Shown here: positions 35,066-62,607 of the stretch, piece after piece
How the letters are laid out: the number at the start of each line of letters is the position of its first letter
How positions within the stretch are numbered: the stretch's first letter is position 1
Virus record (IMG/VR): IMGVR_UViG_3300046517_002304
Location: 62,001-126,000 of that record
Length of the DNA: 64,000 bases
Reading direction: 5' to 3' (one strand)
Made by a program: the position numbers and the translations under genes
The notes under the pieces: generated by a model
The model's input: the letters and a program-made list of their open reading frames with translations, nothing else
Told to the model about the DNA's origin: nothing
The model's database searches: none

Positions 35066-35094
35066 GTAGGTACTAATCGGCAATATACAAATAA

Positions 35095-45400: not shown

Positions 45401-46664
45401 ATGTTAGTCCATCGTCAGCGCTGAAGGCTACATATGTTCCAGTAGACCCGGTAAACACATAGTAGGGGCACATCAGAGTTCCATTTGCTAGTTGCAAAAT
45501 TACTGATGTTGTATCTTTGTTAGTCCCTGAGCTAATAGCAATTCTAGATCCCCAGGTAATGGATAGATCGCCGTGAACCGTGCCTCGTATGACGTATGGA
45601 GTAGCCGTAGCTCCACTATTTGGCTGATCATTAAATGTCAGCAAAACTGTTTTAGCCGTACTAACCATGACTTCTATATCAATTAATGTTCTGCCGGATG
45701 CCGGTGTCATGATCGTTATTGGCCCAGACCATGTTACTCCGTTATCTGACGAAGTACGATATGCGACATATGCGTCCAGCCCGCCAGATCCGCCAGTTGA
45801 ATAAGCCATGAACAATCTGTTATCAGGAGCGGCTAAGCGGCACATACCAGGGGATTCATTGTTAGCTCCGTCATTAATAATGTCAGAACTAAATCCACGC
45901 TGAGGTATCGTACCGCAACCGATAATATCTGCCATATAATTGTTAACAGCAGAATACAGATTTCTCCAATCTGCACCAGTTAAGCTACTACCGCAACCAG
46001 CAACAGATACCTGACTGCTAGTACCGGCACCATTATCCGATAGAATTTTTACGGTTTGACCGGAAGTAAAACCAGTATTTGTTCCCGTAAACTGATTTGA
46101 GGCTACTCCATTTAAGTAAGCGTGACCATGCGTTGAGTCCTCAAGGTTTACTCCAAATAAACCTATATTAGACGCCATGTTAAATGTGCCGGTATTATCG
46201 GCGACATTCGCTATTCCATAATTAAATCTATGACTTGAGGTTGGGGTGCCAATGTAGGTGTTGCTTGGGGGGATGCCTATTAATCCACCGTTATCGCTAA
46301 CCGGGATTGTATTTTTCCAAACAAATAATGATGCACTACTTGTTTTGAAATTAGGCGAGCCAACTGTAGGATCAAAATTAGAATTAATGTAATCAACTGG
46401 AGTTGTCGCTGAGTTTGTGCCAGTATAACCAGCATCGGTAGCAAATGTAGGTGACCCTACTTTAGTTGCTCCGTAAGAGTTTTGAACTAAATTCGTTAAT
46501 GCGGTAGCTTCGTCTGCGGCAGAAAATACATAAAGAGCATCTAATTTTTGCCATACACCAGCATAGTACAAAGCGTCTATTAACTTTGCGTAAGCAGTTG
46601 AGCGCGGCAAATTTGGCTGTGTTGCCAGTCGGACAAGAAATTGATTAACTTGAGGCGATGTCAT
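42489..46664 (-). CDS. Large virion protein: two tandem modules each ending in a BNR/Asp-box (sialidase-like) propeller, then 20-aa Cys repeats and a C-terminal domain
   Basis: Eight Asp boxes (SSDNGVTW, ADDGLTW, KDNGATW, HDGGITW, SSDNGLTW, SSDNGATW, TDNGATW, NDGGTTW); duplicated FL.RLAT.P...AY..LID.LY..GVW.K.D. Confidence 0.85.
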   Translation of the reverse strand: MTSPQVNQFLVRLATQPNLPRSTAYAKLIDALYYAGVWQKLDALYVFSAADEATALTNLVQNSYGATKVGSPTFATDAGYTGTNSATTPVDYINSNFDPTVGSPNFKTSSASLFVWKNTIPVSDNGGLIGIPPSNTYIGTPTSSHRFNYGIANVADNTGTFNMASNIGLFGVNLEDSTHGHAYLNGVASNQFTGTNTGFTSGQTVKILSDNGAGTSSQVSVAGCGSSLTGADWRNLYSAVNNYMADIIGCGTIPQRGFSSDIINDGANNESPGMCRLAAPDNRLFMAYSTGGSGGLDAYVAYRTSSDNGVTWSGPITIMTPASGRTLIDIEVMVSTAKTVLLTFNDQPNSGATATPYVIRGTVHGDLSITWGSRIAISSGTNKDTTSVILQLANGTLMCPYYVFTGSTGTYVAFSADDGLTWGGDVQITSNGTGDDWSESNFIQFSNGIIYGIIRNDNGGTPSRKGYWRTSSKDNGATWAIPVQIFNNTIAPEPARPALLREPNGDLFFVSRFASVSNTPNTSVGYVYSHDGGITWSTPITIYTIGQFFTGSYVYSQGFYDASTQTLMYAIAVGDFNAAQIVFQQFIPLSISATLPSPQSLQFLNRLATYPDTNRAAAYSTLIDGLYADGVWSKIDILNIYAAADTATALTNLIQSSFNSSVVGSLTFTTNSGYVGSGTNSSYINTTFNPTVGTPNFALNSASVFAWRATAPGGDNGLLLGTSLDDKNYIQVYTPGPRYQWACNAGDSSTSSLEPTGLVTKTGLFGATRVASNSVYGYYAGIPLLHSTGAASMPSEVFRTVGSGASASSVTTSTVSAISIGRGMTGADVRNLNVYIQNYLNDIFSIRPEIRFGYTSDAVNDGANNYGAGLGRLLDGRLLCTYHIGDGTGISANLVFRTSSDNGLTWSAATTILTPTTGRSFDYGRVAVLTDGTILVSYVDQLNSGSNNTAKIVKGIVNNDLSITWSALATITSGVFADAAPCGPALRLQNGNLLIGLTALNDAITVVTSSDNGATWGNEHIVTSASGKRFGFMAFVQKANGNIFGVLRGDSLTTADKGYWTTVSTDNGATWSSPIQIFNNTHVPLPSEASLIITPTGRLMFFGRFGAQQPAFSYSNDGGTTWSTESFYYSYNSTFTYGEIIETQGIYDTTTNSVLFGLGLGSFVPSGQITLQQFLPLVETATFTNVCSFNATGHVDHKIALVLPCSSAVAISFNVQHMATCHVTCTCGLSASGKEGELDQCSIICASNIHSSGQIVRNAFCDMTCECILIVLRLVNGTGGLIFGGCADIDVFYGYFAKYMVGSVVYDCRQARVGVLDKVAIKKVRIVNDAGLIMYVDTFNRNWNEYDLCTPSNALAIATAYLEEQVVDAERRAGRCSFTDPLPNIECGKQV

Positions 46665-46670
46665 GTTTTA

Positions 46671-47762
46671 TTATTTAAACTTTTTATATACCTCTTTATA
46701 AATTACCGTAGACTGCGGATCAGGCTCTACAGTAGTATTTAGTATGCGATTCAATCTATCTAAAGGAACTTTAATTGTTGGAATTCTACTTATTTCGTTT
46801 GAAGTGACAGTAATTTTTTTATCTAAGATATAATGTATATTATCGCCAAGATATTCGGTAATTAAATGCTTTACTGGTCCAGTTCCCTTGATATAAACTG
46901 TTTCTCCGATGTGGAACCGTACGTAAACCAAATGATGGGCTATATTTTCATGAAGACGCAAAACACAGAAGCAGCTAATATTAAGCGATGCTCTGTACAC
47001 TATTTTTGCGGAAACTTCTATGAACGAAGATTCTGATAAATGGCAAGTACTTTTACTTATGTTTCTACCGGAAGAACTAAAATTAGACAAGCATATAATA
47101 TGATTAGTGCCTATGTGTGACACTTTTGAAGATGTTGTGATATTAGAATTACATAATACCCTACATGTATCATTATTTGCATTTTTTCCTAATGCCACAA
47201 TGTTGGAATTACAATTTATACTATTTGCCGCAACATGAGCCACGCCTGAAGATGTCGCGATATTAGAATTACACAACAATCTACATGTATCATTATTTGT
47301 ATTTTTACCCGATGCATTGATATTAGAGATACAAACTATATGGTCAGTGCCTATGTGTGATACTCTTGAAGATGACGCGATAATTGAGGAACAAGGTATA
47401 TTGGATGTTAAGCCGCGCAATATTCTGCTATTTCCGCTAATATTAGAAGTACATATAGCATTAGTTGAATCTAGATGAGCTACTTTTGCATTAGCGATTA
47501 TTGTAGAGTCACACCGTACATTAAGGCTAACTATGTAAACAACTTTTGTAGATAGAGTTATGTTAGAGCTGCAAACTATGTGGCAAGTTGCATTATGCAC
47601 AACGGCACAAGATGATGTAACATTAGAAGCGCTTATTTCATTTGTGGTCGTAATGCACGTTAGTTTAGCACTAGCATTAATATTAGATGAACAGACTAAG
47701 TTGGTGTTTCCAGCTTGAAGTAAGCCATTCTTAAAGAAAAATTGATAACGGTAACCTAACAT
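46671..47762 (-). CDS. Protein of ~20-aa Cys/Ser/Asn repeats with a small C-terminal beta domain
   Basis: C.SNI repeat with 20-aa period (DTCRLLCNSNIATSSGVAHV / DTCRVLCNSNITTSSKVSHI). Confidence 0.75.
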   Translation of the reverse strand: MLGYRYQFFFKNGLLQAGNTNLVCSSNINASAKLTCITTTNEISASNVTSSCAVVHNATCHIVCSSNITLSTKVVYIVSLNVRCDSTIIANAKVAHLDSTNAICTSNISGNSRILRGLTSNIPCSSIIASSSRVSHIGTDHIVCISNINASGKNTNNDTCRLLCNSNIATSSGVAHVAANSINCNSNIVALGKNANNDTCRVLCNSNITTSSKVSHIGTNHIICLSNFSSSGRNISKSTCHLSESSFIEVSAKIVYRASLNISCFCVLRLHENIAHHLVYVRFHIGETVYIKGTGPVKHLITEYLGDNIHYILDKKITVTSNEISRIPTIKVPLDRLNRILNTTVEPDPQSTVIYKEVYKKFK

Positions 47763-50700
47763 TATTCTGTACCTACAATCAATCCTCTATCTCCAGCCAC
47801 AGGGGCAGTAGGTAGAGAAATATTAGTTGCAAAGGCTCCTCCTCCTGTATAGGAATTTAGTTTAATAGAAATGCCTTTTAGCGATCCTGTTGTAAATGCG
47901 AGTACTGATTTATTCCAGAACCCAGATGTTTCAGTTCTATTTGTGTTAACGGTATTTGTTGTGCTGCCAGCCGTGACAATAAATTCTGTAAATGCTCCGT
48001 CATCTCCTTGTGCGTTTCCGAATTGAAATTCTTTCACAACCCAAGATGGACTAGCGTTACTGTTATTAATTTGCGTTAAATATACTGTTCCTGGTGTTAG
48101 TGCAGTTGGATTTGTTAAGGCATAAGTCCATAAGCCGGTTGCTAGCGTTCCCCCAGCCGCCATTTGTTGTGACATAGTTGCCGATGGAGATACTAGTGAA
48201 TTAACCGTAAATTGATTTCTGGTAAAATCATACGCTCTAATTCCCCCGTCATTTTGTAGTTCGTATAGGTAAATGCTAGTTGGGCCTGCCGTTACGATGT
48301 TTCCGCTACTGTCAGTAAGCATTTGCCTGAATACAATCTGATTGGCTGTTTGCCTAACATCAACTCCCTTAAGATTGGTATTCGTAGGATTCGGGGTAAT
48401 TCCAAATTGAGCATAATTACTTAATCTTTTATTTTCTTCATTCAACGTCTTCTGGTAGCCAGACAATGAATCTAGGTAAACCTGCTGAATCTCTTGTGCA
48501 GATAAAGCCCTATTCCAGATTCTTACGTCATCTACGCTTGCCTGTATAACATTGCCACCAGTTTCAAATCCGATATTAAATGCTGAGTAGACAGGTACAA
48601 CAGTTGTTTGATCTGTAACTGGTGTTGCCGCAGACTTGCCGTTGTAATAAAGTAACAGTTTATTGGTTGCTCTATCTCTTACAAATACCACTTGCTGCCA
48701 TTGTCCTGTTATTATATTAGGTGCCGCAGATTGAACTGACGGATTTTGTGTGCCGTCATATAGTGACGCTCTCCATTTATTGTTATTAAGCGATGATATG
48801 GTGGCCCAGTAATCACTTAATGCAGCCACATTTGACGCAATTAGAATCATATTGTTAGCTATAGCAATAGGATTCACCCAGACAGACATAGTGAAGGAGT
48901 TTGATAGGCCAGTATTTATCGTACTAGTGATATAGCCAGCAGCACTACCCAGCCTCATTCTTCCAAAGCCACCTTGTCTAGTGTTAGATCTGAACCCATC
49001 ATCTATCCTAGACATATTAGTAAATGTGCCATGCTTATTATTGCCTGATATGTCAAACCAATTAATGCTACCTGCTCTACTTGGTGTGCAAAGGTACCAT
49101 GCTAGTAAGCCTTTATTAAGGGGGTTTCTTTGATTAATTAATTGTGTCTGACGTAGATTGTTTCTAATAGAAGTTTGGCTTGTGTTAGGTCCGTTTGTAT
49201 ATTTAACAATTTCCGATATAGCGACACCGAAATTAAGAGGATCTGTTATTCGTCGGTTTAATGTTTTTTGGTAGCCAGATAGGGCGTCTAAGTACACCTG
49301 CTGAATTTCTTGAGCAACGAGGGGGCGATTCCAGATTCTTACGTCATCAATGTAGCCGTTGAAGAAATTGCCTCCAGTAGGGTTCACTCCATTGCCGCCT
49401 TCTCCTATGAAAAAGTTATCCGCCTCTCCAGTAATCACTCCTGGCTGTACATTAAGTGGCGTTGATGCGAGTACCCCATCAATGAATAAGCTAAGTTTGG
49501 CTCCATCCATAACAGTAACGGCGTTGTGCCATTTATTATCATTAACGGTATTTTGACTAGTTACATCGGTATAGTTTGAGCCTGCTGTAGAAAAAATTTC
49601 AGCAGTTAACTTTTGAGATGTGCCTTTCCCGCCGACGACACCAATAATCAAGCGAAATTTATCAACAGTTGCTCCATTAGAATCTGTAATAAACATATTA
49701 TTTCCATTTGTTTTAAACCATACAGAAATTGTATAAATTCCTATGTTAAAACTTTGAGAAAATGGCACCGTTACATAACTGGTAAAGTTAGAATTAAATA
49801 ACATAGATCCAAAGCCACCTTGTCGTATGTTAGGTCTGAATCCTGCATTGACTAAACCTGCTCCGGCTGATACTAGTGTTCCATGATTTTTTCCGGCGAT
49901 GTCTTGCCATAGGGGTCCAGACATTCTGCTCGGCACACAAAGCCACCAGCTCACTAGCCCCTTATTAAGAGTACTTCGTGGATTTACTAATTGTGTTTGC
50001 TTTAAGTTATTTTTTATGGTCGGTTGGCTGGTGTTTGGGCCGTTAGGGTAATTGACAATGTTAACTGATCCATTCCAGATTCGCTTTGTTGTGCGATTGA
50101 TTAAGTTTGGATAGCCCTGCTGGCTGTTTTGATACATTTGATTAATTTCATTAGCATTTAATGCACGATTATAAACACGAACATCGTCAACGTATCCAGG
50201 AAACCAGGCGTTACTTGCCCCATAGATACCTATGTTAAATGGCGTTCCCACTGCTGGCGATGGACTACCAGTAGTACTGGATTTAACTGGCGTCTTTCCG
50301 TCTACGGAAATAAAGGTATTGCCACCGTCAAATCCAGCGGCAATAAAATGCCATCCGTTATTTAATCCAGAACTACCCCATGTGATGTTAGCCGGCGTAA
50401 GCCCATAGCAAAAGAATTGCGGTGCCAGGCTTTGACTGCCGAAGTAAATCATATAGCCATTTGTACCAGCTACTACTTTGCTGAATGGCACTAAGTTTGC
50501 TCCAGTTCCAGTAAGGTTACACCAGCAACTAATTGTGAATGGTCCAGCTAAATCTAGGTTTGGCTTTGCCCCCACCGAAACGCTTCCAGCGATACCATCC
50601 AGTAACATTGAGCCGAATCCGCCCTTACGGCTACTACCACGAAATCCATTTGTGGCTTGTGGCATTGTAGTAAGGGTTCCGTGATTACTTCCTATTAAGT

Positions 50701-50848
50701 CATACCATTTCACGCTCCCCGACCTGCTAGGCAACACTAACCACCAGCTAATTAATCCATTGGCAAGAGAATGCTTGCGATTGACTGGGTTTGGGAAGTC
50801 AATATTATTATTAGATATGGAGAATAACTGTGAGCTAATTAGGGGCAT
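47762..50848 (-). CDS. LamG/concanavalin A-like virion protein A (3 LamG domains plus conserved C-terminal module)
   Basis: 3x WH/WQ-type strand...DG...DDVR[VI][YW]NR.L; shared C-terminal EFQFGNAQGDDGAF; TAAATA-N4-ATG. Confidence 0.88.
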   Translation of the reverse strand: MPLISSQLFSISNNNIDFPNPVNRKHSLANGLISWWLVLPSRSGSVKWYDLIGSNHGTLTTMPQATNGFRGSSRKGGFGSMLLDGIAGSVSVGAKPNLDLAGPFTISCWCNLTGTGANLVPFSKVVAGTNGYMIYFGSQSLAPQFFCYGLTPANITWGSSGLNNGWHFIAAGFDGGNTFISVDGKTPVKSSTTGSPSPAVGTPFNIGIYGASNAWFPGYVDDVRVYNRALNANEINQMYQNSQQGYPNLINRTTKRIWNGSVNIVNYPNGPNTSQPTIKNNLKQTQLVNPRSTLNKGLVSWWLCVPSRMSGPLWQDIAGKNHGTLVSAGAGLVNAGFRPNIRQGGFGSMLFNSNFTSYVTVPFSQSFNIGIYTISVWFKTNGNNMFITDSNGATVDKFRLIIGVVGGKGTSQKLTAEIFSTAGSNYTDVTSQNTVNDNKWHNAVTVMDGAKLSLFIDGVLASTPLNVQPGVITGEADNFFIGEGGNGVNPTGGNFFNGYIDDVRIWNRPLVAQEIQQVYLDALSGYQKTLNRRITDPLNFGVAISEIVKYTNGPNTSQTSIRNNLRQTQLINQRNPLNKGLLAWYLCTPSRAGSINWFDISGNNKHGTFTNMSRIDDGFRSNTRQGGFGRMRLGSAAGYITSTINTGLSNSFTMSVWVNPIAIANNMILIASNVAALSDYWATISSLNNNKWRASLYDGTQNPSVQSAAPNIITGQWQQVVFVRDRATNKLLLYYNGKSAATPVTDQTTVVPVYSAFNIGFETGGNVIQASVDDVRIWNRALSAQEIQQVYLDSLSGYQKTLNEENKRLSNYAQFGITPNPTNTNLKGVDVRQTANQIVFRQMLTDSSGNIVTAGPTSIYLYELQNDGGIRAYDFTRNQFTVNSLVSPSATMSQQMAAGGTLATGLWTYALTNPTALTPGTVYLTQINNSNASPSWVVKEFQFGNAQGDDGAFTEFIVTAGSTTNTVNTNRTETSGFWNKSVLAFTTGSLKGISIKLNSYTGGGAFATNISLPTAPVAGDRGLIVGTE
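50055..50098. repeat. 44-nt identical segment shared with 58813..58856
   Basis: ACAATGTTAACTGATCCATTCCAGATTCGCTTTGTTGTGCGATT present in both LamG genes A and D. Confidence 0.9.
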
Positions 50849-50928
50849 ACTTTATTTAATGTTTATATCAATAATTGCCGAACATATATATTTTTGTATT
50901 TATCGTTGTTTCAAATTTACCTTTATAG

Positions 50929-50943
50929 TTACTAAATAGTTTA
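50929..50943 (+). promoter_or_regulatory. Late-promoter-like element TTACTAAATAGTTTA (copy 2)
   Basis: Exact match to 41918..41932; followed by AGGAA and ATG 50972. Confidence 0.6.
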
Positions 50944-50971
50944 GAACATAGTCTTATAGGAATGATATTTA

Positions 50972-51364
50972 ATGGCTACTAATAGTACACCACAGATTGC
51001 TTATATTTCAACAATTCAAGCTTTAACCGGCATTGCTGGTTCAAGCGCAATTACAGCCACATTGGTCAACGCGACTGCTGCCTGGGAAATTAGAGTACCG
51101 TTTCAGGGAGTTCAGGCATCAAACGTTTCTGCTGGACCAGAACTATGGGTCTACGAAGCGGTTGCGGGCGCGTCAGGTGCGGCACCTTTGTGGACGACTT
51201 TGCCACTTGTGTTCCCGATTCCCTTCCGAAGCTCAGGGAACGACACTCAAATTATTCGTTTGGACACTGGCTTATACCTCTTCGCCTTGTGTAGTGGTGG
51301 CCCAAACACCAGCAGTTGCGGTTGCTTGACTGCCCAAGTCATTACCGGCGTGCTTAACCAGTAA
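50972..51364 (+). CDS. Small beta-rich probable virion protein
   Basis: 130 aa; own late box, RBS and terminator. Confidence 0.7.
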   Translation: MATNSTPQIAYISTIQALTGIAGSSAITATLVNATAAWEIRVPFQGVQASNVSAGPELWVYEAVAGASGAAPLWTTLPLVFPIPFRSSGNDTQIIRLDTGLYLFALCSGGPNTSSCGCLTAQVITGVLNQ

Positions 51365-51385
51365 GTTATTTATTATAAATTCATC

Positions 51386-51412
51386 AAAAAGCCCACAAAT
51401 TGTGGGCTTTTT
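51386..51412. terminator. Bidirectional intrinsic terminator
   Basis: AAAAAGCCCACAAATTGTGGGCTTTTT. Confidence 0.88.
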
Positions 51413-51520
51413 GCATTTATGCATACTTTTCAATATTTTACTCATGTTATTCTGCTGTTTGCCGATAAGTACTGTTACAATATGTAAAAGCAATTAGTAT
51501 TTTAAAACAGAAAGAAAATC

Positions 51521-52891
51521 ATGCCATTTAAAGACCCAGATAAACGTAAAGAATACAACCGATTATACGAACTTAAGAATAAAGAAAAGCAAAACGAATA
51601 CAGAAAAAATTGGGGAGCCGCTAAAAGAAGGGCAGAAGGGAAACAGCAAAATGGCCTAAAGTCTTTAGCCGACTTTCCAGAAGTTGTGGCTAAATATTGG
51701 CATCCATTTAAGAATGGCACAAATAAACCAGAAGACTTTACGTCAGGCACTAGAACTAAAGTATGGTGTCAATGTAAAGAAGGGAAGTGGCCAGATGGCA
51801 CTCCTGCCGACGATCACGTATTTGACATGGAAGTACAAAAACTAACATCTGGATACGGTTGTCCATATTGCTGTGGTAAACGAGTTTGTAAATCTAACTC
51901 TTTTGGGGAATGTTGTCCAGAAGCAGCAGTATTTTTTGATGTTAATAAGAATGAAGGTAAAACACCATTTGATTTTACATATGGTTCAGGTCAAAAAATA
52001 CATTGTAAGTGTAATGCTGGAACTTGGCCAGACGGATCATATGCAGATGATCATGAATGGATAAGTACTCCATGCGATTTAAGAGCCGGATATTGGTGTC
52101 CTTGTTGTACGGGTAATAAAATAGTTTTGTCAAATTGTTTGGCAACTACGCATCCCGAAGTATCAAAAATGTTACATCCTACACTTAATGGAAATACGTC
52201 TGCTAAAGACATAACAAATGGTTCAGATAAGTTAATATGGTGGAAATGTCCTGATAAAGACCATGCTTGGGAAGCCACAATTAATTCTGTAGTACAAGGA
52301 CATGGTTGCGGGATATGTGGTGGTAAAAAAGTAGATAATACAAATTCGCTCGCAGCACTATATCCAGACGTAGCTAAAGAATGGCATCCTATTTTAAATG
52401 GAGACAGTAAACCAGAACATTTTACTTATGCTAGTGGCAAAAAGGCTTGGTGGGCATGTCCAAAAGACAAATGTGGATATGAATGGAGTGCTCAAATAGA
52501 CAGGAGAACAAGGAGAGGAGACGGTTGTCCTAAGTGCAATCAGTCGCATGGTGAAAAGGCCGTTGCCAAGCACTTAGATTTTCTAAAAATTAAATATGAA
52601 GTGGGATATAGAATTAAAGAATGTAAACTTATTAAATGCCTTCCATTTGATTTTTATTTACCTGATTTCAATATCTTAATTGAATACCATGGAAGACAAC
52701 ATTATGAACCATCGGCCTTCGGATCTAAACAAGAAAATGCGGCGGAATTAATGTTTGAAGCGGGCCAAAAAAGAGACGAAGCTAAAGAAAAATACTGTCG
52801 GGATAACAAAATTCCACTACTGATAATCCCATTTTGGGAATTTAATATTATCCCTAATGTAATCGATAACTTCCTAAAATCCAAAAATTAA
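51521..52891 (+). mobile_element. Zinc-ribbon-repeat PD-(D/E)xK nuclease (homing-endonuclease-like)
   Basis: 4x PE....[WF]...NG...P.....G...[WH]..C...GCP.C; C-terminal LPFDFYL...IEYHGRQHY...YCRDNKIPLLIIPFW. Confidence 0.8.
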
Positions 52892-55090
52892 TCCAGTATC
52901 GTTTCTAGACGGAGCAACTGGCAAAGCCGAACTTACCGTAAATGTGCCATTGCTAAAGGCAGAAACATGAGCAGACAACCCTTTACACGCTCCCGAAGTA
53001 AACCCTATAACCGATCCTACCCAGAAAGATGTAGCATCAGTTCTGTTGGTCGTTATTGACGTTGTGCTACTCCCTAGCCCCACTACAAACTCTGTAAATG
53101 CACCATCATCACCTTGTGCATTTCCAAACTGAAATTCTCTAGTCTGTGGAATACCCCCAGTAACGGAATTAGATACTTGGCTGATATAGATTGATCCAAC
53201 CGTAAATGCCGAAAGCTGATTGATAGCATAGGTCCAAATTCCAGTAGCCGTCGTTGCATTATTAATGGTCTGATGCTTCATATTATCTGTGGATTTAACA
53301 GGGGTTCCGACAATAAAGGCATTTGTACTAAAATCATAATTTCTTAAAGATCCATCGCTTTGTAGCTCAAATATAGAAATTGTAGTTGTGCCTGAAGAAG
53401 CTGGATTCCCACTGTCTATAAAAAAGTTACGGAATATAATTGCTTTGCTTGTTTGTCTAACGTCAATCCCCTTAACTCCAGAGTTAGATGAAATATAAAA
53501 GGGAAAATTTCTTTTTTCCACAACACGGTTTAATGTCTTCTGATAGCCAAGCAAAGAATCAAGATAAATCTGCTTAATTTCTTGTGCAGTTAATGGACGA
53601 TTCCATATTCTTGCGTCATCTACTAAGCCATTAAAAAAGTTAGATGCAGTGCCGCTAGCATTCGCGCCAATGCGTATCGGTAGACCTGCTGCTGTCGGAT
53701 CTACCGATTGCGGAGTTGATGCTATTTGGTTCCCATTTACATAGAGGTATAGATTGAGTCCATCCCATACCATACCGATATGCGCCCATTTACCTACTGC
53801 CCATCCATCGGGAAACTGTGTGTGGTTAGCCGATCCGGTATTATTCAATTCTACTTGCCACCGTGAAGCATTAGAAATAATGCCGAAACAATTTATGTCA
53901 TTCCAGATATTTCCCTTAGCAAATACTACGCCTCCTGTTGTCGATAGTGGTTTAGCCCATATTGATAAAGATCCAACGTGCGTAAGGTTAAGCGATGCTT
54001 TATCTGCTATTTCAACGTATGTCGCACTGCCGTCTAGTTGAATATACCCAAATCCGCCCTGTCTCATATTGGATTTAAATCCAGTTGTAGCTTGCGCCAC
54101 TCCAGAGAGCGTTCCGTGGTTCTGGTTAAGTAGGTCAAGCCACTTTGGCCCACCTATTTTGTTGGGTAAACATAACCACCATGCTATTAGTCCTTTGTTT
54201 AGCGGATTACGTTGATTTATTAACTGTGTTTGGCGTAAATTATTTATAATGCTTGGCTGGCTAGTGTTAGGGCCGTTAGGATAGTTAACAATGTTGTTGT
54301 TTCCGATATTGATTTTCTTAGTTGTGCGATTAATTAGATTAGGATAACCCTGTATTGAATTCTGATAGACTTGACTTATTTCCCTCGCCATCAACGCACG
54401 GTTATAGATGCGACAATCGTCTAATTGTCCACCGAAATTCCTGAGGTTTGAATTTCTGCCGAATGCTCCAGCCGTTTGTAGCGTTACATTTTTTCCAGCA
54501 TAACTAAATATGCCACTGTCGCTTTTGCCATTCAGGTAATAGATTACATTTAATCCAGCGTCCATTGTTACAGCAACGTGGTACCAGATACCTACCGTTA
54601 TTGCCGTTCTGCTAATGCCAACTGGATTGTAATCGCCTGATCGGCCCAGTGAAATAAAAGCTGAATTGCTGCCACCGCCGCCGTTATTCCCAAACTCCAT
54701 TCCCGCGTCACCGATACTATCTGCCGCGCAAAACCACGATTGTATTGTTGCCTCAGGAACTACCGAACGCTTAACCCAACAGCATAGCGTATAGATAGAC
54801 AATGCTGGAAATGTAACATTTATTGCGTCATCTACGCCGTCAAACTGAACGGCACCGAATGCACCGCGGCGAGTAGAGCCGCGAAAGCCACTTGCCCCAG
54901 TTGCCATGCTGGTGAGGGTGCCGTGATTAGCTCCTACTATGTCATACCATTTCACGCTGCCCGCCTTACTTGGTAGACAAAGGTACCAGGCCACTAGGCC
55001 AGACATAAGGGGATTCTTGCTGTTAATTAAGCTAGTTTGATTTATATTGTTGCTGGATACAACGAATGGTTTAGAATTTTTTAACAGCAT
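52874..55090 (-). CDS. LamG virion protein B (2 LamG domains plus conserved C-terminal module)
   Basis: Paralogue of 47762..50848; TAAATA-N4-ATG. Confidence 0.88.
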   Translation of the reverse strand: MLLKNSKPFVVSSNNINQTSLINSKNPLMSGLVAWYLCLPSKAGSVKWYDIVGANHGTLTSMATGASGFRGSTRRGAFGAVQFDGVDDAINVTFPALSIYTLCCWVKRSVVPEATIQSWFCAADSIGDAGMEFGNNGGGGSNSAFISLGRSGDYNPVGISRTAITVGIWYHVAVTMDAGLNVIYYLNGKSDSGIFSYAGKNVTLQTAGAFGRNSNLRNFGGQLDDCRIYNRALMAREISQVYQNSIQGYPNLINRTTKKINIGNNNIVNYPNGPNTSQPSIINNLRQTQLINQRNPLNKGLIAWWLCLPNKIGGPKWLDLLNQNHGTLSGVAQATTGFKSNMRQGGFGYIQLDGSATYVEIADKASLNLTHVGSLSIWAKPLSTTGGVVFAKGNIWNDINCFGIISNASRWQVELNNTGSANHTQFPDGWAVGKWAHIGMVWDGLNLYLYVNGNQIASTPQSVDPTAAGLPIRIGANASGTASNFFNGLVDDARIWNRPLTAQEIKQIYLDSLLGYQKTLNRVVEKRNFPFYISSNSGVKGIDVRQTSKAIIFRNFFIDSGNPASSGTTTISIFELQSDGSLRNYDFSTNAFIVGTPVKSTDNMKHQTINNATTATGIWTYAINQLSAFTVGSIYISQVSNSVTGGIPQTREFQFGNAQGDDGAFTEFVVGLGSSTTSITTNRTDATSFWVGSVIGFTSGACKGLSAHVSAFSNGTFTVSSALPVAPSRNDTGLIFGF
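54903..54962. repeat. 60-nt near-identical segment (1 mismatch) shared with 59461..59520
   Basis: GCCATGCTGGTGAGGGTGCCGTGATTAG[C/T]TCCTACTATGTCATACCATTTCACGCTGCCC in LamG genes B and D. Confidence 0.9.
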
Positions 55091-55097
55091 ATAGTAT

Positions 55098-57335
55098 TTA
55101 CTGCACGCTTATGATAATCCCTCTATCCCCTACATTTGGTGTACTTGGCAAACTAGCCGATAATGTAAATGATCCCCCTGAATATGAAGATACTTTTGCA
55201 CTTTTACCTTTAAGGCTTCCTGTAGTAAATGCTATTTCAGCACTATTCCAGTAGCCTGATGCTTCGGTGCGATTAGTGTTTAATACCGTCAAGCTATTGT
55301 TTGGTTTGGCGACAAACTCTTGAAAGAATCCATCGTCACCCGGTTGGTTTCCGAATTGAAATTCTTGTGCCTGCCACATTGGGGACGCATTAGAATTGTT
55401 AAACTCAGCTATGTACATGGCTCCATTTGTAAACGCTTGTGTATTAAATAAAGCATAGGTCCACATGCCAGTATTGCCTTGTTGCTTTGCCGTTATCGAT
55501 GGACTACTTAATGTTCCGTAAGAAAAAGTGTTGGTAGACCAATCATATTGTTTTAAATCGCCATCAGATTGAATTTCAAAAAGATAAATTTGTGTTGATC
55601 CTGTTGTGACGGCCGCACCACTATTGTTTAGCATACATGATCTTAAAACAAGTTCAGTATTAGTTTGAACAATATCAATGCCTTTGAATCCTGAATTTTT
55701 GTTCGCAGGAAAATAGCCAAACCTAGATGTATGGTTTAGTAAACCTGGATAGCCTTGTAATGAATTAAGGTACATTGCCTGAATTTCGCTTATATTTAGC
55801 TTACGATTATAAAAGCGAACGTCATTAATATTGCCTTTAAAGAAATAGTTTGCATTACCTGAACTTTGTGCTGCCCCGATCATGGTTGGTGTTGTAAAAC
55901 TATTAATATTTGCGAATGTTCCAGCAGTCACATTTGAATCGTCTACACGAGCGCCATTTAAATATACTTGAATCGCTGCTGTTGTAGTTCCTCCGTTGTA
56001 GGATGCCGCAACATGATGCCATTTGTTTGTCGGTAGAGTGCCGCTGTAGTAACGTCCTATAAATGCTCCATTAGCATCGTCGTAGCAGATCAATGCCAGT
56101 TGTGAACCATTATTTGCATTGAAGTTAAAAATATACTCTTTTGCCACGCCAACGCTATCTTTATATTTTGCAAGAATGGTAGGTGCTCCGCCAGTAGTAT
56201 TAAAAGAGCTGGCATTGACCCATGCCGATACTGTGAATGCTCCACTGGGATGTAGAACATTTCCAGCATTAGCATTGAACGCAGTGTTGTCAAATAGTAA
56301 TGAACCAAATCCACCTTGATGTGTAGTAGGTCTAAATCCATTAGCGGTAGAATTAACTCTCACTAATGCAGCATGATTCTGTCCTACTATATCTAAGAAT
56401 GCGCTGCTGCCCAGTTTACTCGGTAAGGCTAGCCACCAAGCCGATAAGCCATTTGCCAAAGCATGTTTTCGGTTTACTAATTGTGTATGCCTTAGATTAT
56501 TCTTGATTGTTGGTTGACTAGTGCTAGGGCCATTCGGTGATTGGACAACGGCAAGAGGCCCAATGTTCATTTTGCGAATCGTACGATTGATCAATCCGGG
56601 GTATCCCTGTTGGCTGTTGTGATACATTTGAGCAATTTCTATTGCGCTTAATCCGCGATTATAAACTCGTACATCATCCATATTGCCATTAAAATGATTA
56701 GTGGCACTCCCTCCCTGGAAATAACCAAGCTGATAGTCTAATCCACTAGAGTAGGTTCGTGTAATAGTAACAGAGGTATCTTGTTTTCCGTTTACATACA
56801 AAGTCATGGTTGTAGATAAATATGTAACGGCGACATGATACCATTGATTTAAAACGAAAACTGTATTTGATATTATATCATCAGCGACGTTTACTTTGCC
56901 GAAATGTAGTTTTGAGTCAGATCCGGCAACGTAAAATTCATAACCATTAGCAGGCCCGGAAATAATATTATTGTTTCTAGCGACTATTACTGTTTGATAA
57001 ATCCATGCAGATATAGTTAATGGTGCTCCAGTAATATTAAGAATGGCAGGACTACCAAGATCTGCTGCCGTAGTTACACCGTCAAATAGTAGTGAGCCAA
57101 AACCGCCAGGGCGACTACTACCACGGAATCCGTTAGAAGATGGAAACACACCAGTAAGCGCTCCATTATTTCTATATCCAGAAATATCATGCCACTTAGC
57201 ACTTCCCATTCTGTGTGGCAAACATAACCACCATCCCACAAGACCCTTTGCTAGAGGATGCTTGCGATTAACTGGATCGGATTGATTGACGTTGTTTTGA
57301 GCAACGGCAAAAGGATTAGATATCGTTATCGGCAT
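55098..57335 (-). CDS. LamG virion protein C (2 LamG domains plus conserved C-terminal module)
   Basis: Paralogue; TACATA-N4-ATG. Confidence 0.88.
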   Translation of the reverse strand: MPITISNPFAVAQNNVNQSDPVNRKHPLAKGLVGWWLCLPHRMGSAKWHDISGYRNNGALTGVFPSSNGFRGSSRPGGFGSLLFDGVTTAADLGSPAILNITGAPLTISAWIYQTVIVARNNNIISGPANGYEFYVAGSDSKLHFGKVNVADDIISNTVFVLNQWYHVAVTYLSTTMTLYVNGKQDTSVTITRTYSSGLDYQLGYFQGGSATNHFNGNMDDVRVYNRGLSAIEIAQMYHNSQQGYPGLINRTIRKMNIGPLAVVQSPNGPSTSQPTIKNNLRHTQLVNRKHALANGLSAWWLALPSKLGSSAFLDIVGQNHAALVRVNSTANGFRPTTHQGGFGSLLFDNTAFNANAGNVLHPSGAFTVSAWVNASSFNTTGGAPTILAKYKDSVGVAKEYIFNFNANNGSQLALICYDDANGAFIGRYYSGTLPTNKWHHVAASYNGGTTTAAIQVYLNGARVDDSNVTAGTFANINSFTTPTMIGAAQSSGNANYFFKGNINDVRFYNRKLNISEIQAMYLNSLQGYPGLLNHTSRFGYFPANKNSGFKGIDIVQTNTELVLRSCMLNNSGAAVTTGSTQIYLFEIQSDGDLKQYDWSTNTFSYGTLSSPSITAKQQGNTGMWTYALFNTQAFTNGAMYIAEFNNSNASPMWQAQEFQFGNQPGDDGFFQEFVAKPNNSLTVLNTNRTEASGYWNSAEIAFTTGSLKGKSAKVSSYSGGSFTLSASLPSTPNVGDRGIIISVQ

Positions 57336-57347
57336 ATTATATGTATT

Positions 57348-59648
57348 TTATTGACTACCTATTATGACGCCGCTATCGCCGATAGATGGAGTGCTTGGAA
57401 GACTTGTTTTTAAAGTAAACGACCCGCTTGTGTAAGATAGTACTCTTGCCGATATGCCTCTTAAAGATCCGGTAGAAAATGCTATTAAAGAGTTGTTCCA
57501 AAAACTTGTCGCTTCTGATCGGTTTGTCTTAATAGTTAAATTGGTTGAGCCTGGAGTAATAATAAATTTTACGAATGCTCCGTCATCGCCCTGAGCATCG
57601 CCGTATTGGAATTCTTTTGCTTGTACAGCAGGAAAGGCGTTTGTATTTGTGATCTGCGAAATATAAACAGACCCTACATTAAATCCTTGTAGCTGAGCCA
57701 AAGAATATGTCCAGATACCCGTGTTAAATGTTCTATTATTAGTGGTCCTATGAACCATATTAGCTTGTGATTTAACTACTGATCCAGTGGTAAATGCATT
57801 ATTATTAAAGTCAAAAGTTTTGATAGATCCATCTGATTGAACCTCATAAATAGACATCAAGGTATTGCCTGATGTGACCTGATTGCCATTTAGATCCACT
57901 AAGAGTGTTCGTATTACTAATTGTTTAGATGTTTGCTTGACATCTATGCCCTTGATACCTAGGTTAATCGGGGGTGAAATAAATCCTGAATTTGCGTATG
58001 TATTTAATCTTGTGCTGATTTTGCCTAACGTCTTCTGATAGCCAGATAAGCTGTCTAGATAAACCTGCTGAATCTCTTTAGGTACCAGATCCCTCCCGTA
58101 AATTCTAACGTCGTCAATTCTTCCGCTGAATGTACTAGCTTCATTGAAAGCAAACGCACCGATTCTGATATTTCCCGATGTTGTGTCTATTGCTCCCATT
58201 GATGCATTAGAGTTACTCGCGTTGAATACACCATTGATATATAACTCGCCGCTAGTCCCCCGCTTGATTAATGCAACGTGATACCAAGTATTCGGATTAA
58301 TGATCGTTTGAGACTGAGGTACAGTTGAGTTGCCAGAACCGTCTCGCAGCACAGCAGATAATTTATTAAAACCCCCGCCGCTCTGGCCTAAGCCAAGATC
58401 TAATCGTGCGGTTCCACCAGCGCTCGCCATTGCAAATATACATTGTCCTGCACCTATAGCACTTGAATTAAACCAAGCCATTGCGGTGATATTGCCGTTT
58501 GTATTATTAGCTGGCGATAGCTTCGCCATATTTCCGCCGATTAAAACATCGTGCAATACTGTTGCGTCAAATTGCACAGAGCCAAAGCCGCCTTGTCTAG
58601 TGTTAGGTTTGAATACTAAAGCAGGATCTCCGAATTTGCCATGAAACGTATTGAGTAAGTCAAACCATTTGCCTGCGCCCATTCTGCCGGGCACACATAA
58701 CCACCAGGCGAGCAATCCATTATTCAGACTGCTACGCCGATTGACTAACTGATTCTGCTTTAGGTTATTCCTGATTATTGGCTGGCTGGTGTTAGGACCA
58801 TTCGGATAATTCACAATGTTAACTGATCCATTCCAGATTCGCTTTGTTGTGCGATTAATTAAATTAGGATAGCCTTGTTGGCTATTTTGATACAGTTGAT
58901 TTATTTCATTAGCAGACAGTGCGCGATTGTAAAACCGCACATCGTCAACATTGCCGGCTAAGAAGGAATCTGCGATAACTCCACCTCTTTGCCTTGCTCC
59001 AATTGTTACATTGTCCCGATTAATAGGACCGCTTAACCATAGCCCATCATTAGAGTTTGTGACTGCTGTCGCTATTTCTTGCTTGCCGTCTACAAATAAT
59101 AAATACGCAGAACCGTTAGACATAACTGCAACGTGGTGCCATTTGCCATCGCCTATATTTGTTCCGCCTCTTACTCGCCTGTATCCATTTAGCGTGCTTT
59201 CCGCCTCAACTGTTATATTAGTGGTACTGACACCCGTAACAGCAAGCATGTAGAGATAGTTTGCGTTTCCCCCCTCATCTGCCGTTCCGCAGATATATCC
59301 TGATGCCGTGGAAGTATTGATCCATGCCGTTATTGTGCCGGTAAGCGTAGTTCCGCCAAAGTTAGCGATTGATTCGTATACGTAACCAGCCGTTCCATCC
59401 AGTAACATTGAGCCAAATCCACCCTTACGACTACTGCCACGAAATCCATTAGTGGCCTGAGCCATGCTGGTGAGGGTGCCGTGATTAGTTCCTACTATGT
59501 CATACCATTTCACGCTGCCCATTCTGGTAGGCAGGCAGAGCCACCAGGCGAGCAACCCATTTGCAAGATTATGCTTACGATTGACTGGATTAGGGTAATC
59601 AATATTATTAGCAGATATAGAAAACAACTGTGAGCTAATTAATGGCAT
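57348..59648 (-). CDS. LamG virion protein D (2 LamG domains plus conserved C-terminal module)
   Basis: Paralogue; N-terminus MPLISSQLFSIS identical to protein A; TACATA-N4-ATG. Confidence 0.88.
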   Translation of the reverse strand: MPLISSQLFSISANNIDYPNPVNRKHNLANGLLAWWLCLPTRMGSVKWYDIVGTNHGTLTSMAQATNGFRGSSRKGGFGSMLLDGTAGYVYESIANFGGTTLTGTITAWINTSTASGYICGTADEGGNANYLYMLAVTGVSTTNITVEAESTLNGYRRVRGGTNIGDGKWHHVAVMSNGSAYLLFVDGKQEIATAVTNSNDGLWLSGPINRDNVTIGARQRGGVIADSFLAGNVDDVRFYNRALSANEINQLYQNSQQGYPNLINRTTKRIWNGSVNIVNYPNGPNTSQPIIRNNLKQNQLVNRRSSLNNGLLAWWLCVPGRMGAGKWFDLLNTFHGKFGDPALVFKPNTRQGGFGSVQFDATVLHDVLIGGNMAKLSPANNTNGNITAMAWFNSSAIGAGQCIFAMASAGGTARLDLGLGQSGGGFNKLSAVLRDGSGNSTVPQSQTIINPNTWYHVALIKRGTSGELYINGVFNASNSNASMGAIDTTSGNIRIGAFAFNEASTFSGRIDDVRIYGRDLVPKEIQQVYLDSLSGYQKTLGKISTRLNTYANSGFISPPINLGIKGIDVKQTSKQLVIRTLLVDLNGNQVTSGNTLMSIYEVQSDGSIKTFDFNNNAFTTGSVVKSQANMVHRTTNNRTFNTGIWTYSLAQLQGFNVGSVYISQITNTNAFPAVQAKEFQYGDAQGDDGAFVKFIITPGSTNLTIKTNRSEATSFWNNSLIAFSTGSLRGISARVLSYTSGSFTLKTSLPSTPSIGDSGVIIGSQ

Positions 59649-61102: not shown

Positions 61103-61867
61103 TTAAAAATTCATATATAACACCTCAGTTTTTTTCTTAGCCTTAGTATTATGAGCGCCAGTTCTGCATGTGCCGACACATTCCCGCTCTACTCTTCTCC
61201 ATTTAGAAAAATATTTATCCGCTTCTGGGTATTCTGATAAAATAACATTAGATGTTGCATCCATTAAAACAGCGACCATTTGCTGATAATTTACGCCAAA
61301 TTTGTACTCTTTTTCATGGCCCAAATACGGAGGGTCTACGTAAATTAATGTTTTTTCTTGCTGGTAAACTCTAAGTATAGTTTTTATTGCATCTTCTTGT
61401 AATATCTCACAAGATCTTAATCTAGCAGCGGCAGGAAGCACCCTTAGAAACCAATCCGCCCAAACCTCTTGTTTAGGCTTATGTGGGCAAGGAGATTTGT
61501 CTACAGCCCACGTAGACGTGTTACCATTGCCACAGTAAAACTGAACGCTTTTGGCCATGAATAATCTAGCATCTTCTAAGGTCTCCGGATCAACAAAGTC
61601 TCTCCAATTAGTATTACAGTATGGTGTAGCCCATAACATTGCAGCTAACTTTTCTGGCTCTTCTCTTATTTTTTTAAACACATTAATAATTTGACCGTCC
61701 ATATCATTTATAATTTCTATAAATGACCTTGGTTTCTCAAATAATACTGAACAAGATCCTACGAATGGCTCACAGTACGTTCTGTGTTCTGGAAAATGAC
61801 TCACAATCCATTTTGCTAGAGTGGATTTTCCACCATATTGCTTAACTGCGATTTTAATTTTTGGCAT
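61103..61867 (-). CDS. dam: DNA adenine methyltransferase (Dam/D12 family)
   Basis: YGGKS, YCEPFVGS, INDMD, YVDPPY. Confidence 0.92.
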   Translation of the reverse strand: MPKIKIAVKQYGGKSTLAKWIVSHFPEHRTYCEPFVGSCSVLFEKPRSFIEIINDMDGQIINVFKKIREEPEKLAAMLWATPYCNTNWRDFVDPETLEDARLFMAKSVQFYCGNGNTSTWAVDKSPCPHKPKQEVWADWFLRVLPAAARLRSCEILQEDAIKTILRVYQQEKTLIYVDPPYLGHEKEYKFGVNYQQMVAVLMDATSNVILSEYPEADKYFSKWRRVERECVGTCRTGAHNTKAKKKTEVLYMNF

Positions 61868-62564: not shown

Positions 62565-62607
62565 TAATTAATTATCCTTAAATTAAAAGTAATTTCTTAC
62601 TAGTGGT

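What the first reader, a model, noticed from the sequence alone, without database searches (positions are those of the whole stretch)
47762..59648. Four-gene LamG array (nine domains) with patchwork DNA identity: a recombination-diversified adhesin family
Seen: four paralogues share one architecture, (linker-LamG)x2-3 plus a ~190-aa C-terminal module with EFQ[FY]G..[AP]GDDG.F. The LamG cores diverge strongly, while the borders are near-identical in a mosaic way: B and D share 60 nt with 1 mismatch (54903/59461), A and D share 44 identical nt (50055/58813) and the N-terminal MPLISSQLFSIS, and A and B share NNLRQTQLINQRNPLNKGL. Inference: conserved linkers act as crossover points that swap glycan-binding cassettes, and the shared C-terminus anchors them to a common virion site.
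Basis: partly seen in the sequence, partly recalled or inferred. Interest (0 to 1): 0.6.

Follow-up and report, generated by a model that had tools for sequence, protein, structure and literature searches.

The report
Four LamG lectin fibre genes, megaphage
A 511-kb soil phage carries four old paralogous genes, each stringing two or three very different lectin-like (LamG) domains onto one shared end module that other phages use at the start of their tail fibres; recombination has left two clear footprints in the array, but most of the shared borders are kept alike by selection.

Summary
Four minus-strand genes (A 1028, B 738, C 745, D 766 aa) carry 3+2+2+2 LamG_3 domains and a ~200-aa C-terminal module. 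The 60-nt (1 mismatch) B/D match and the 44-nt exact A/D match are real.

- The paralogues are old. Synonymous sites are saturated for every unit pair except the A1/D1 flanks (dS ~0.9).
- The "borders" are not passive linkers. They are the first four strands, the last strand and the helix of the LamG fold, plus a ~40-aa linker. Purifying selection mostly keeps them alike; for example, 19 identical residues shared by A and B use only 6 identical codons.
- Two recombination footprints are significant: a 60-nt B1/D1 conversion tract, and A1/D1 flanks younger than their core (identical codons 64% against 29%, p = 0.003).
- No two of the nine cores are alike (13-26% identity). Contigs from four other soil and rhizosphere runs show no chimeras.

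The first domain of the C-terminal module is homologous to the N-terminal domain of hundreds of modular phage fibre or spike proteins. It also occurs as a stand-alone ~210-aa protein. A ~460-aa beta-helix-like gene sits directly upstream of it in three lineages. An anchor role is therefore plausible but unproven.

Verdict: a new variant of modular receptor-binding proteins, of moderate interest.

The parts
47762..50848 (-). Gene A, 1028 aa. LamG units A1 (50051-50848), A2 (49202-50050), A3 (48371-49201); C-terminal module 47765-48370.
   Evidence: ORF, translation, 3 PF13385 stretches, unit borders from motifs.
52874..55090 (-). Gene B, 738 aa. LamG units B1 (54284-55090), B2 (53474-54283); C-terminal module 52877-53473.
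   Evidence: Module folded with pLDDT 88.
55098..57335 (-). Gene C, 745 aa. LamG units C1 (56541-57335), C2 (55686-56540); C-terminal module 55101-55685.
   Evidence: Closest outside relative is P0036: 45% overall, 65% in the module.
57348..59648 (-). Gene D, 766 aa. LamG units D1 (58809-59648), D2 (57954-58808); C-terminal module 57351-57953.
   Evidence: D1 fold model.
59461..59520 (-). Gene-conversion tract in D1. Its partner in B1 is 54903-54962; 59/60 nt identical. It encodes GSVKWYDIVG(T/A)NHGTLTSMA.
   Evidence: Site support for A1=D1 against B1=D1 is 41:11 to the left, 1:10 inside and 27:3 to the right. Fisher p = 4e-13 for B1/D1 differences inside against outside the tract. Synonymous run p = 0.0002.
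54903..54962 (-). Partner copy, in B1, of the B1/D1 conversion tract.
59386..59648 (-). D1 N-flank. It is 81% nt identical to the A1 N-flank (50586-50848) and younger than the core (dS 0.90).
   Evidence: BLASTN, dN/dS, identical-codon test, sliding profile.
58680..58949 (-). D1 C-flank, linker and start of D2. It is 80% nt identical to A 49922-50191 and contains the 44-nt exact match (58813-58856 = 50055-50098). Only the unit-1 part is young (dS 0.87); the start of unit 2 is saturated.
58950..59385 (-). D1 core (436 nt), with no detectable nt similarity to the A1 core (50192-50585, 394 nt). 23% aa identity; synonymous sites at background.
51521..52891 (+). Free-standing HNH homing-endonuclease gene (456 aa, 3x DUF4379 treble-clef fingers). 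It splits the array between A and B, is convergent with B and overlaps it by 18 nt.
   Evidence: phrog_559 E 4e-54; PF14311 E 4e-44.
50972..51364 (+). 130-aa ORF of unknown function in the same insertion, followed by a 29-nt palindrome at 51385-51413.
59659..61086 (-). 475-aa beta-helix-like protein directly upstream of D. It is the conserved upstream neighbour of module-bearing genes in other phages.
   Evidence: Homologous to L001:1813-3198 (E 6e-47; N-terminal 118 aa about 75% identical) and to L094:6661-8004 (E 2e-18). Both lie directly upstream of a module gene. A 473-aa gene holds the same place next to P0036.
46671..47762 (-). 363-aa protein made of ~40-aa Cys-containing repeats. It overlaps the end of A by 1 nt.
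   Evidence: The repeats are shared with the giant LamG proteins E and F and with the tail of the 1391-aa protein.
42489..46664 (-). 1391-aa BNR/sialidase-like propeller protein, the last gene of the putative receptor-binding cluster.
   Evidence: PF13088 E 1.5e-29.

Best explanation
The four genes are an old, tandemly duplicated family of peripheral tail proteins (receptor-binding or adhesion) in a 511-kb soil myovirus. Each protein is a string of two or three LamG (concanavalin-A-like lectin) domains. It ends in a two-domain beta-sandwich module, and that module is the family's constant part. Its first, FN3-like domain is the same domain that hundreds of other phage fibre or spike proteins carry at their N-terminus, ahead of variable receptor-binding parts. 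It most likely docks the protein onto the tail, probably next to or onto the ~460-aa beta-helix-like protein encoded directly upstream (inferred). The nine LamG cores are all different, so the particle would display nine distinct binding surfaces (inferred).

The conserved 'borders' are the first four strands, the last strand and the closing helix of each LamG fold, plus a ~40-aa flexible linker. Purifying selection mainly keeps them alike. Because they stay alike, they occasionally act as substrates for homologous recombination. Two events are shown: a 60-nt conversion between B1 and D1, and an A1/D1 mosaic whose two flanks share a younger ancestor than the core between them. A mosaic of that kind is what a core replacement by double crossover in the flanks would leave.

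On population timescales such exchange is rare. The locus is identical in the contigs from four other samples.
For: Architecture and LamG assignment.

Tail context: tail sheath, tube, sheath stabiliser and baseplate hub lie within 10-20 kb on the same strand. The LamG parts hit phrog_8510 'virion structural protein' and the S-PM2 virion structural protein.

Module:
- Confident two-domain beta model, with generic FN3/macroglobulin matches. The small domain resembles hub/Dit-type domains of siphophage tail tips, Z 8.4-9.9, and Phage_BR0599, TM 0.64.
- 30 homologues carry it at residues 4-129, followed by beta-helix, propeller or SU10-adaptor parts.
- An exhaustive search found 807 clusters. Almost all have the module N-terminal, seven are stand-alone ~210-aa proteins, and it is C-terminal only in this phage and in one related sample.
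- The upstream ~460-aa neighbour is conserved in three lineages.

Age and selection:
- dS is saturated except for the A1/D1 flanks (0.90 and 0.87).
- The background identical-codon fraction is 0.39, against 0.376 expected from codon usage.
- The 19-aa A/B identity uses 6/19 identical codons.

Recombination:
- B1/D1 tract.
- A1/D1 flank 0.64 against core 0.29 identical codons, p = 0.003, with abrupt steps in the identity profile.

Control: LamG units of the same subfamily in giant proteins E and F keep 74% core identity at dS 1.17, and 39-49% even where dS is saturated.

Fold: strands start at residue 32 of D1, the helix is at 246-257, and the linker 267-302 is disordered.
Against: - No experiment or proteome places A-D in the virion.
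- The anchor role rests only on homology of position and on synteny. The one complex prediction, between the N-terminus of the 475-aa protein and the D module, gave no verdict.
- The module is C-terminal here. That is the reverse of all other long homologues, so it might play a different role in this context.
- No donor for any core was found, so core replacement cannot be told apart from two separate flank conversions.
- The core synonymous test rests on only 24 aligned same-residue codons in a poorly alignable region.
- The D1 model is of modest confidence (pLDDT 65).
- Glycan binding by these LamG domains is assumed from the superfamily only.
Confidence: 0.6

Rival explanations
1. Duplication and divergence only. 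The array grew by old tandem duplications. Flanks stay alike because they are structurally constrained, and cores diverged in place under diversifying selection from host receptors. Recombination is limited to trivial short conversions and never moved a core.
For: Nearly all flank similarity has saturated synonymous sites. All nine cores are equally distant and none is shared between units. No chimeric contigs were seen in four other samples. The cores of the orthologue-like P0036 are also the most diverged part: 26-30% against 65% in the module. With flank dS ~0.9, a core dN of 1.33 needs an omega of only about 1.5.
Against: At residues conserved between the A1 and D1 cores, synonymous identity is at background (7/24), while the flanks show 70/110 (p = 0.003). 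Selection on amino acids should not erase synonymous identity at conserved codons. The identity profile falls abruptly from about 0.8 to about 0.25 at both junctions, and the cores differ in length by indels. E/F units at a similar dS keep 74% core identity.
Confidence: 0.25
2. Active cassette shuffling. Crossovers in the conserved borders frequently swap whole glycan-binding cassettes among the four genes and between co-infecting phages. The homing endonuclease between A and B may help by supplying double-strand breaks.
For: Two recombination footprints have junctions in the flanks. An HNH homing-endonuclease gene is inserted in the array. In the related sample the gene next to the 473-aa protein is C-like rather than D-like, so array content differs between relatives.
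Against: No core occurs twice. The footprints are few: the A1/D1 one is old (dS ~0.9) and the B1/D1 one covers only 60 nt. Contigs from four independent soil and rhizosphere runs are identical to the window, and every apparent joint or variant is gene A cross-laid on D. DNA identity in most borders is too low (60-75%, with synonymous sites saturated) to be an efficient substrate for homologous recombination.
Confidence: 0.1
3. These are not receptor-binding proteins. The LamG arrays could be capsid or sheath decoration, or non-structural proteins such as secreted or lysis-released lectins or glucanase-like enzymes, and the C-terminal module could be just another Ig-like decoration domain.
For: FN3/Ig-like domains are common passive decorations. 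Fold matches for the first module domain are generic. In L093 the module gene lies between the capsid and tail-tube genes. No Pfam or PHROG family names the module.
Against: The module heads proteins whose remainder is a beta-helix, propeller or adaptor domain typical of spikes and fibres. The array lies between a beta-helix-like protein and a BNR propeller protein in a tail gene module. The upstream partner is conserved. No catalytic family was detected in the LamG units.
Confidence: 0.05

Closest known systems
T-even long-tail-fibre adhesin loci (gp37/gp38), where recombination between conserved motifs swaps adhesin specificity. The work of Tetart, Desplats and Krisch (1998) is cited from my own knowledge; the review of gp38 modularity is PMC3157838 and that of T4-related genomes is PMC2993671 (both only listed, not read).
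   Same: Variable binding segments are flanked by conserved sequence that can act as recombination sites. The locus lies in the tail module of a T4-like contractile-tail phage, and homing endonuclease genes are scattered in the same region.
   Different: Here the variable segments are the middles of LamG folds, not glycine-rich or His-box delimited loops. There are four paralogues in tandem. Most flank identity is at protein level only, and no swapped segment was actually found twice.
Multi-tailspike, branched receptor-binding complexes with conserved N-terminal anchor domains (CBA120 TSP1-4, G7C gp63.1/gp66, Klebsiella jumbo phage PhiK64-1). Cited from my own knowledge; tailspike modularity is covered in PMC10408124 (only listed, not read).
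   Same: Several receptor-binding proteins are encoded side by side. Each combines a family-wide conserved attachment domain with a different binding part, which would give one particle several specificities.
   Different: The conserved domain is at the C-terminus here and at the N-terminus there. The binding parts are non-enzymatic lectin-like domains in series rather than one beta-helix depolymerase. The attachment domain belongs to no described family.
Laminin_G_3 virion proteins of large phages (phrog_8510; the Synechococcus phage S-PM2 virion structural protein).
   Same: LamG_3 domains in tandem within virion-annotated proteins. Another uncultivated phage (L004) also has two tandem multi-LamG genes with its own conserved linker.
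   Different: Identity is only 27-30% and confined to the LamG fold. None of these proteins carries the C-terminal module.
Streptomyces umbrella toxin particles with sets of diversified lectins (PMC13274773; bioRxiv 10.1101/2025.04.24.650519; abstracts listed).
   Same: One particle carries several paralogous, strongly diverged lectin domains on a common scaffold, read there as bet hedging over surface glycopolymers.
   Different: That is a bacterial toxin complex, not a phage. It has no sequence relation to these genes and is only a functional analogy.

Membership tests
Laminin_G_3 / concanavalin-A-like lectin domain (PF13385) | Match to the Pfam model above the gathering score | tested here: met
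   216.8, 146, 165.1 and 144.2 bits against a cut-off of 27.6, with 3+2+2+2 stretches.
Laminin_G_3 / concanavalin-A-like lectin domain (PF13385) | Beta-sandwich (jelly-roll) fold | tested here: inconclusive
   The D1 model is all-beta with 14 strands and a closing helix, but its mean pLDDT is only 65 and it was not put through a fold search.
Laminin_G_3 / concanavalin-A-like lectin domain (PF13385) | Carbohydrate or other ligand binding | not testable with these tools
   Needs glycan arrays or cell-binding assays.
Modular phage receptor-binding proteins (conserved anchor plus variable binding part) | Encoded in the tail or baseplate gene module | tested here: met
   Sheath, tube, sheath stabiliser and baseplate hub lie on the same strand nearby. 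A beta-helix-like gene and a BNR propeller gene flank the array.
Modular phage receptor-binding proteins (conserved anchor plus variable binding part) | A conserved domain shared with proteins whose binding parts differ | tested here: met
   807 clusters share the module, with downstream beta-helix, propeller, SU10-adaptor or unknown parts.
Modular phage receptor-binding proteins (conserved anchor plus variable binding part) | The conserved anchor domain is N-terminal | tested here: not met
   In A-D and P0036 the module is the last ~200 residues. In about 135 of the best 150 hits it starts at residues 3-9.
Modular phage receptor-binding proteins (conserved anchor plus variable binding part) | Physical presence in the virion and binding to a tail partner | tested here: inconclusive
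   The complex prediction with the upstream 475-aa protein gave no verdict. Proteomics or EM are not available.
Motif-mediated adhesin cassette exchange (T-even gp37/gp38 type) | Segments of one gene with conflicting ancestry | tested here: met
   The B1/D1 tract lies inside an A1-like D1 flank. The A1/D1 flanks are younger than the core.
Motif-mediated adhesin cassette exchange (T-even gp37/gp38 type) | The same variable cassette found between different flanks | tested here: not met
   All cores of A-D are 13-26% identical to each other, and 12-30% to the E, F and P0036 units.
Motif-mediated adhesin cassette exchange (T-even gp37/gp38 type) | Chimeric alleles in natural populations | tested here: not met
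   Contigs of four runs are identical to the window. The joints are paralogue cross-mapping. Contigs drop rare variants, so this is weak evidence.
Diversity-generating retroelement targets | A reverse transcriptase and a template repeat | tested here: not met
   No PF00078 match in the complete 511-kb genome. Differences between cores are not confined to adenine positions.
Invertase-switched tail fibre genes (Mu Gin / P1 Cin type) | Inverted repeats flanking alternative fibre segments, plus a site-specific invertase | tested here: not met
   All four genes are co-oriented. The only inverted self-match in the region is a 29-nt palindrome at 51385-51413.

The most novel reading that the evidence does not exclude
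The ~125-aa FN3-like domain, alone or with its ~75-aa companion domain, would be a widespread and so far undescribed phage docking module (at least 807 clusters at 50% identity). It would work together with a conserved ~460-aa beta-helix-like partner. This megaphage lineage has turned the usual topology around: arrays of LamG lectin domains are fused in front of a stand-alone module protein, and the fusion was then multiplied four-fold. One particle would thus carry nine unrelated lectin surfaces, a 'lectin bouquet' for broad or bet-hedged adsorption in soil. New cores would be acquired by double crossovers inside the LamG fold, at the conserved strand-coding flanks.
Probability: 0.3. Interest if true: 0.6.

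Novelty: new variant of a known kind. Interest (0 to 1): 0.4.

Why it matters
Host recognition by huge soil phages is almost unknown. This locus offers a concrete, testable set of candidate adhesins. It also defines an unannotated attachment module found in hundreds of phage lineages, with a candidate partner protein. Finally, it is a worked example of how to separate selection from recombination in 'mosaic' paralogues by using synonymous sites. If the anchor module and its partner are confirmed, they could be used to predict which genes are receptor-binding proteins in many uncultivated phages.

Tried and rejected
- Megablast of the locus against 50,697 phage records found no match. A tblastn of D found only distant LamG hits of 27-32%.
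- Pfam and PHROGs gave nothing for the C-terminal module, even at E = 10.
- Foldseek against the PDB found nothing at E <= 1e-3.
- Complex prediction of residues 1-130 of the 475-aa protein with the D module returned 'no answer'. It is not evidence either way.
- A DGR is rejected, because the genome has no reverse transcriptase.
- Invertase switching is rejected: there are no inverted repeats and the genes are co-oriented.
- Promoter and terminator scans found no more sites than shuffled sequence.
- The metagenome-contig scan returned only seven short, distant loci.
- The viral-contig scan returned one fragment of this same phage (L003) and otherwise only distant LamG proteins.
- DNA of the one related sample (JGI 3300047160) could not be fetched because the file is too large. 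The orthologous array could therefore be compared only at protein level, and only in part.
- The read 'joints', 'loose ends' and six 'other letters' at 58857-58884 were rejected as variants. All of them match gene A exactly.
- The 44-nt exact A/D run was considered as a separate recent conversion. It is only marginal (p about 0.03).
- No alternative genetic code was used.
Full report
**Setting.**
The window is bases 62001-126000 of a 511,233-bp virus record with direct terminal repeats, rated complete. It has 39% G+C and only four tRNA genes. A contractile-tail module lies in the window:
- baseplate hub, 28506-29570
- tail tube, 35164-35730
- tail sheath, 35763-38072
- sheath stabiliser, 38420-39367

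Three homing-endonuclease genes are scattered through this module. No phage in the reference collection is close. The same sequence occurs in soil and rhizosphere metagenomes from six coded studies. It is therefore an uncultivated soil megaphage of the myovirus type.

**The observation.**
Four co-oriented minus-strand genes fill 47762-59648: A (1028 aa), B (738), C (745) and D (766). D, C and B are separated by 12 and 7 nt. An insertion on the opposite strand separates B from A. It holds a 130-aa ORF and an HNH homing-endonuclease gene at 51521-52891. Pfam finds 3+2+2+2 Laminin_G_3 stretches.

Motif positions divide the proteins into nine units of 265-285 aa plus a 195-202-aa C-terminal module. 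The A/B peptide NNLRQTQLINQRNPLNKGL, however, is identical only as protein, with 43/57 nt and 6/19 codons the same. The C-terminal motif should read EFQ[FY]G[ND][AQ][QP]GDDG[AF]F.

**What the borders are.**
A model of D residues 1-310 (mean pLDDT 65, so used only for secondary structure) puts beta-strands at 32-37, 47-50, 59-62 and 80-84. All of these lie inside the conserved N-flank. The last strand is at 231-240, a helix at 246-257, and a low-confidence stretch at 267-302. The conserved borders are therefore mostly integral parts of the LamG fold, and only about 40 residues form a true linker. The variable core is the middle of the fold, about 130 residues.

**Selection or recombination?**
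I aligned the nine units by codon and used synonymous sites to tell the two apart.

Evidence for old paralogues under purifying selection:
- Across all unit pairs other than A1/D1 and B1/D1, the fraction of identical codons at identical degenerate residues is 0.39. Codon usage alone predicts 0.376.
- NG86 dS is saturated (above 1.5 or not computable) for nearly every pair and segment, while flank dN is 0.3-0.4.
- The paralogues are therefore old, and purifying selection maintains the flank similarity.

Exception 1, the B1/D1 tract:
- It has 16 consecutive synonymously identical codons (permutation p = 0.0002; about 0.008 after correcting for 42 pairs).
- Informative sites switch from A1=D1 (41 against 11) to B1=D1 (10 against 1) and back (27 against 3).
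- This is a gene-conversion tract of about 60 nt.

Exception 2, the A1/D1 flanks:
- dS is 0.90 and 0.87, with dN 0.11 and 0.04. Their cores are 23% identical, with dN 1.33 and saturated dS.
- At residues that remain identical, 70/110 codons are identical in the flanks but only 7/24 in the core (Fisher p = 0.003).
- The nucleotide identity profile steps from about 0.8 to about 0.25 and back at both junctions.
- Diversifying selection in place would not erase synonymous identity at conserved codons. Flanks and core therefore have different ages: the unit is a recombinant mosaic.
- The equal dS of the two flanks favours a single history, meaning unit duplication followed by core replacement, over two separate flank conversions. 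This is inference.

The 44-nt exact run is only marginally longer than the flank's general identity predicts (p about 0.03).

**Limits on the cassette-swap idea.**
- All nine cores are 13-26% identical to one another. They are no closer to the four LamG units of the same subfamily embedded in two giant proteins elsewhere in the genome (E, 2580 aa; F, 1645 aa), or to the two units of the only outside relative, P0036. No core is seen twice, so exchange among the present paralogues is not shown and any donor is unknown.
- The E/F units are a useful control. At dS 1.17 the E1 and F1 cores keep 74% identity, and even saturated E/F pairs keep 39-49%. The A-D cores are thus unusually diverged for this domain in this genome.
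- Contigs from four other soil and rhizosphere runs cover the locus with no differences. Every joint, loose end and variant reported is gene A cross-laid on D. Contigs hide rare variants, so this argues only against common chimeric alleles.
- There is no reverse transcriptase in the genome, so a DGR is excluded.

**The C-terminal module.**
- It folds confidently (pLDDT 88) into an FN3/macroglobulin-like sandwich of about 115 residues plus a small beta domain of about 75 residues.
- Fold matches for the first domain are generic.
- The small domain resembles a domain of hub or distal-tail proteins in siphophage tail tips (Z 8.4-9.9, near the noise level the tool quotes). It also resembles Phage_BR0599 models (TM 0.64).
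- No Pfam or PHROG family covers the module.

By sequence the first domain is common.
- A word-based search found 30 proteins with 36-52% identity. All carry it at residues 4-129, followed by beta-helix, beta-propeller, SU10-adaptor or unknown parts.
- An exhaustive profile search found 807 cluster representatives, 203 of them below 1e-30.
- In the best 150, the module is N-terminal in about 135 and is a stand-alone ~210-aa two-domain protein in seven.
- It is C-terminal only in fragments of this phage and in two proteins from one other sample: P0036, which is C-like, and P0045, which is 77% identical to the end of A.
- A-D therefore look like LamG arrays fused in front of a stand-alone module protein.
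- One phage contig (L093) has a 251-aa LamG gene directly upstream of a module gene. That is a possible unfused state.

**A conserved neighbour.**
The 475-aa gene directly upstream of D has homologues in two other phages. It matches the 461-aa gene directly upstream of module gene P0023 in an ~80-kb phage contig (E 6e-47; the first 118 residues are about 75% identical). It also matches the 447-aa gene directly upstream of the stand-alone module gene P0046 in a 136-kb contig (E 2e-18). A 473-aa gene holds the same place next to P0036.

The pairing is not universal, since searches show other neighbours. Even so, it recurs across very distant phages and points to a working partnership. A structure-based test of the pair gave no verdict.

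Downstream of A lie a 363-aa protein built of Cys-containing repeats, which are shared with E, F and the next gene, and a 1391-aa BNR propeller protein. The whole stretch from 42.5 to 61.1 kb reads as a receptor-binding gene cluster beside the tail genes. In T4 (from my own knowledge) the corresponding position next to the neck and sheath genes holds the whisker, short-fibre and baseplate-periphery genes.

**Conclusion.**
The family is best read as four old paralogous tail-peripheral proteins that display nine different LamG lectin-like domains on a common docking module. Recombination at the conserved flanks is demonstrated twice. It is a minor and slow contributor, however, compared with old duplication, purifying selection on the flanks and strong divergence or replacement of the cores.

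The anchoring idea gains support from homology and synteny, but with an unusual reversed topology, and it is not proven. The kind of system is known: modular receptor-binding proteins with mosaic evolution. The new elements are the variant itself, the unannotated module and its conserved partner.

Noticed in passing
window 51521-52891 (+), 34010-35083 (-), 40846-41886 (-): Three homing-endonuclease genes (two HNH, one LAGLIDADG with a C-terminal HTH) are interspersed in the tail and fibre gene module. One of them splits the LamG array between A and B. Their double-strand breaks could promote co-conversion of neighbouring fibre genes during mixed infection, but this is speculative.
   Followed up: partly
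window 59659-61086 (-); L001:1813-3198; L094:6661-8004: A ~450-475-aa beta-helix-like protein with a highly conserved N-terminal ~118 residues lies directly upstream of module-bearing genes in three distant phage lineages. No Pfam or PHROG family covers it.
   Followed up: partly
window 46671-47762 (-); G000:C1:127085-134827 (L090); G000:C1:459148-464085 (L091); window 42849-43190: A ~40-aa Cys-containing repeat (C.SNI...KV.H...) builds the 363-aa protein. It recurs many times in two giant proteins (2580 and 1645 aa), each of which also embeds two LamG units of the same subfamily, and in the C-terminal part of the 1391-aa BNR protein.
   Followed up: partly
window 12978-15848 (+): Three consecutive ORFs are filled with a 69-nt (23-aa) tandem repeat, WWxxGxxHRxxGPA. 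The only family hit is a weak DUF6745 match.
   Followed up: partly
window 51385-51413: A 29-nt near-perfect palindrome lies between the 130-aa ORF and the HNH gene. It could be a terminator or an endonuclease-related site.
   Followed up: no
L004:4190-8442 (IMGVR_UViG_3300047369_000677): An unrelated phage contig has two tandem multi-LamG genes (678 aa with three units; 737 aa with two units plus another domain). They have their own highly conserved inter-domain linker. Tandem LamG arrays with conserved junctions therefore recur in phages.
   Followed up: partly
L093:5242-7239: A 251-aa single-LamG gene sits 4 nt upstream of a gene whose product starts with the module. The pair lies between the capsid and tail-tube genes. 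It may be an unfused counterpart of the A-D architecture.
   Followed up: partly
window 39404-40153 (+) and 61103-61867 (-); 61869-63948 (-): There are two DNA adenine methyltransferase genes. Two glycosyltransferase-like genes lie just upstream of the fibre cluster.
   Followed up: no
JGI sample 3300047160 (P0036, P0045): A related phage has an A-like gene (77% identity in its last 136 aa) but only a 45%-identical C-like gene next to the 473-aa protein. Members of the array have thus diverged at very different rates, or array content differs between relatives. The DNA could not be fetched.
   Followed up: partly
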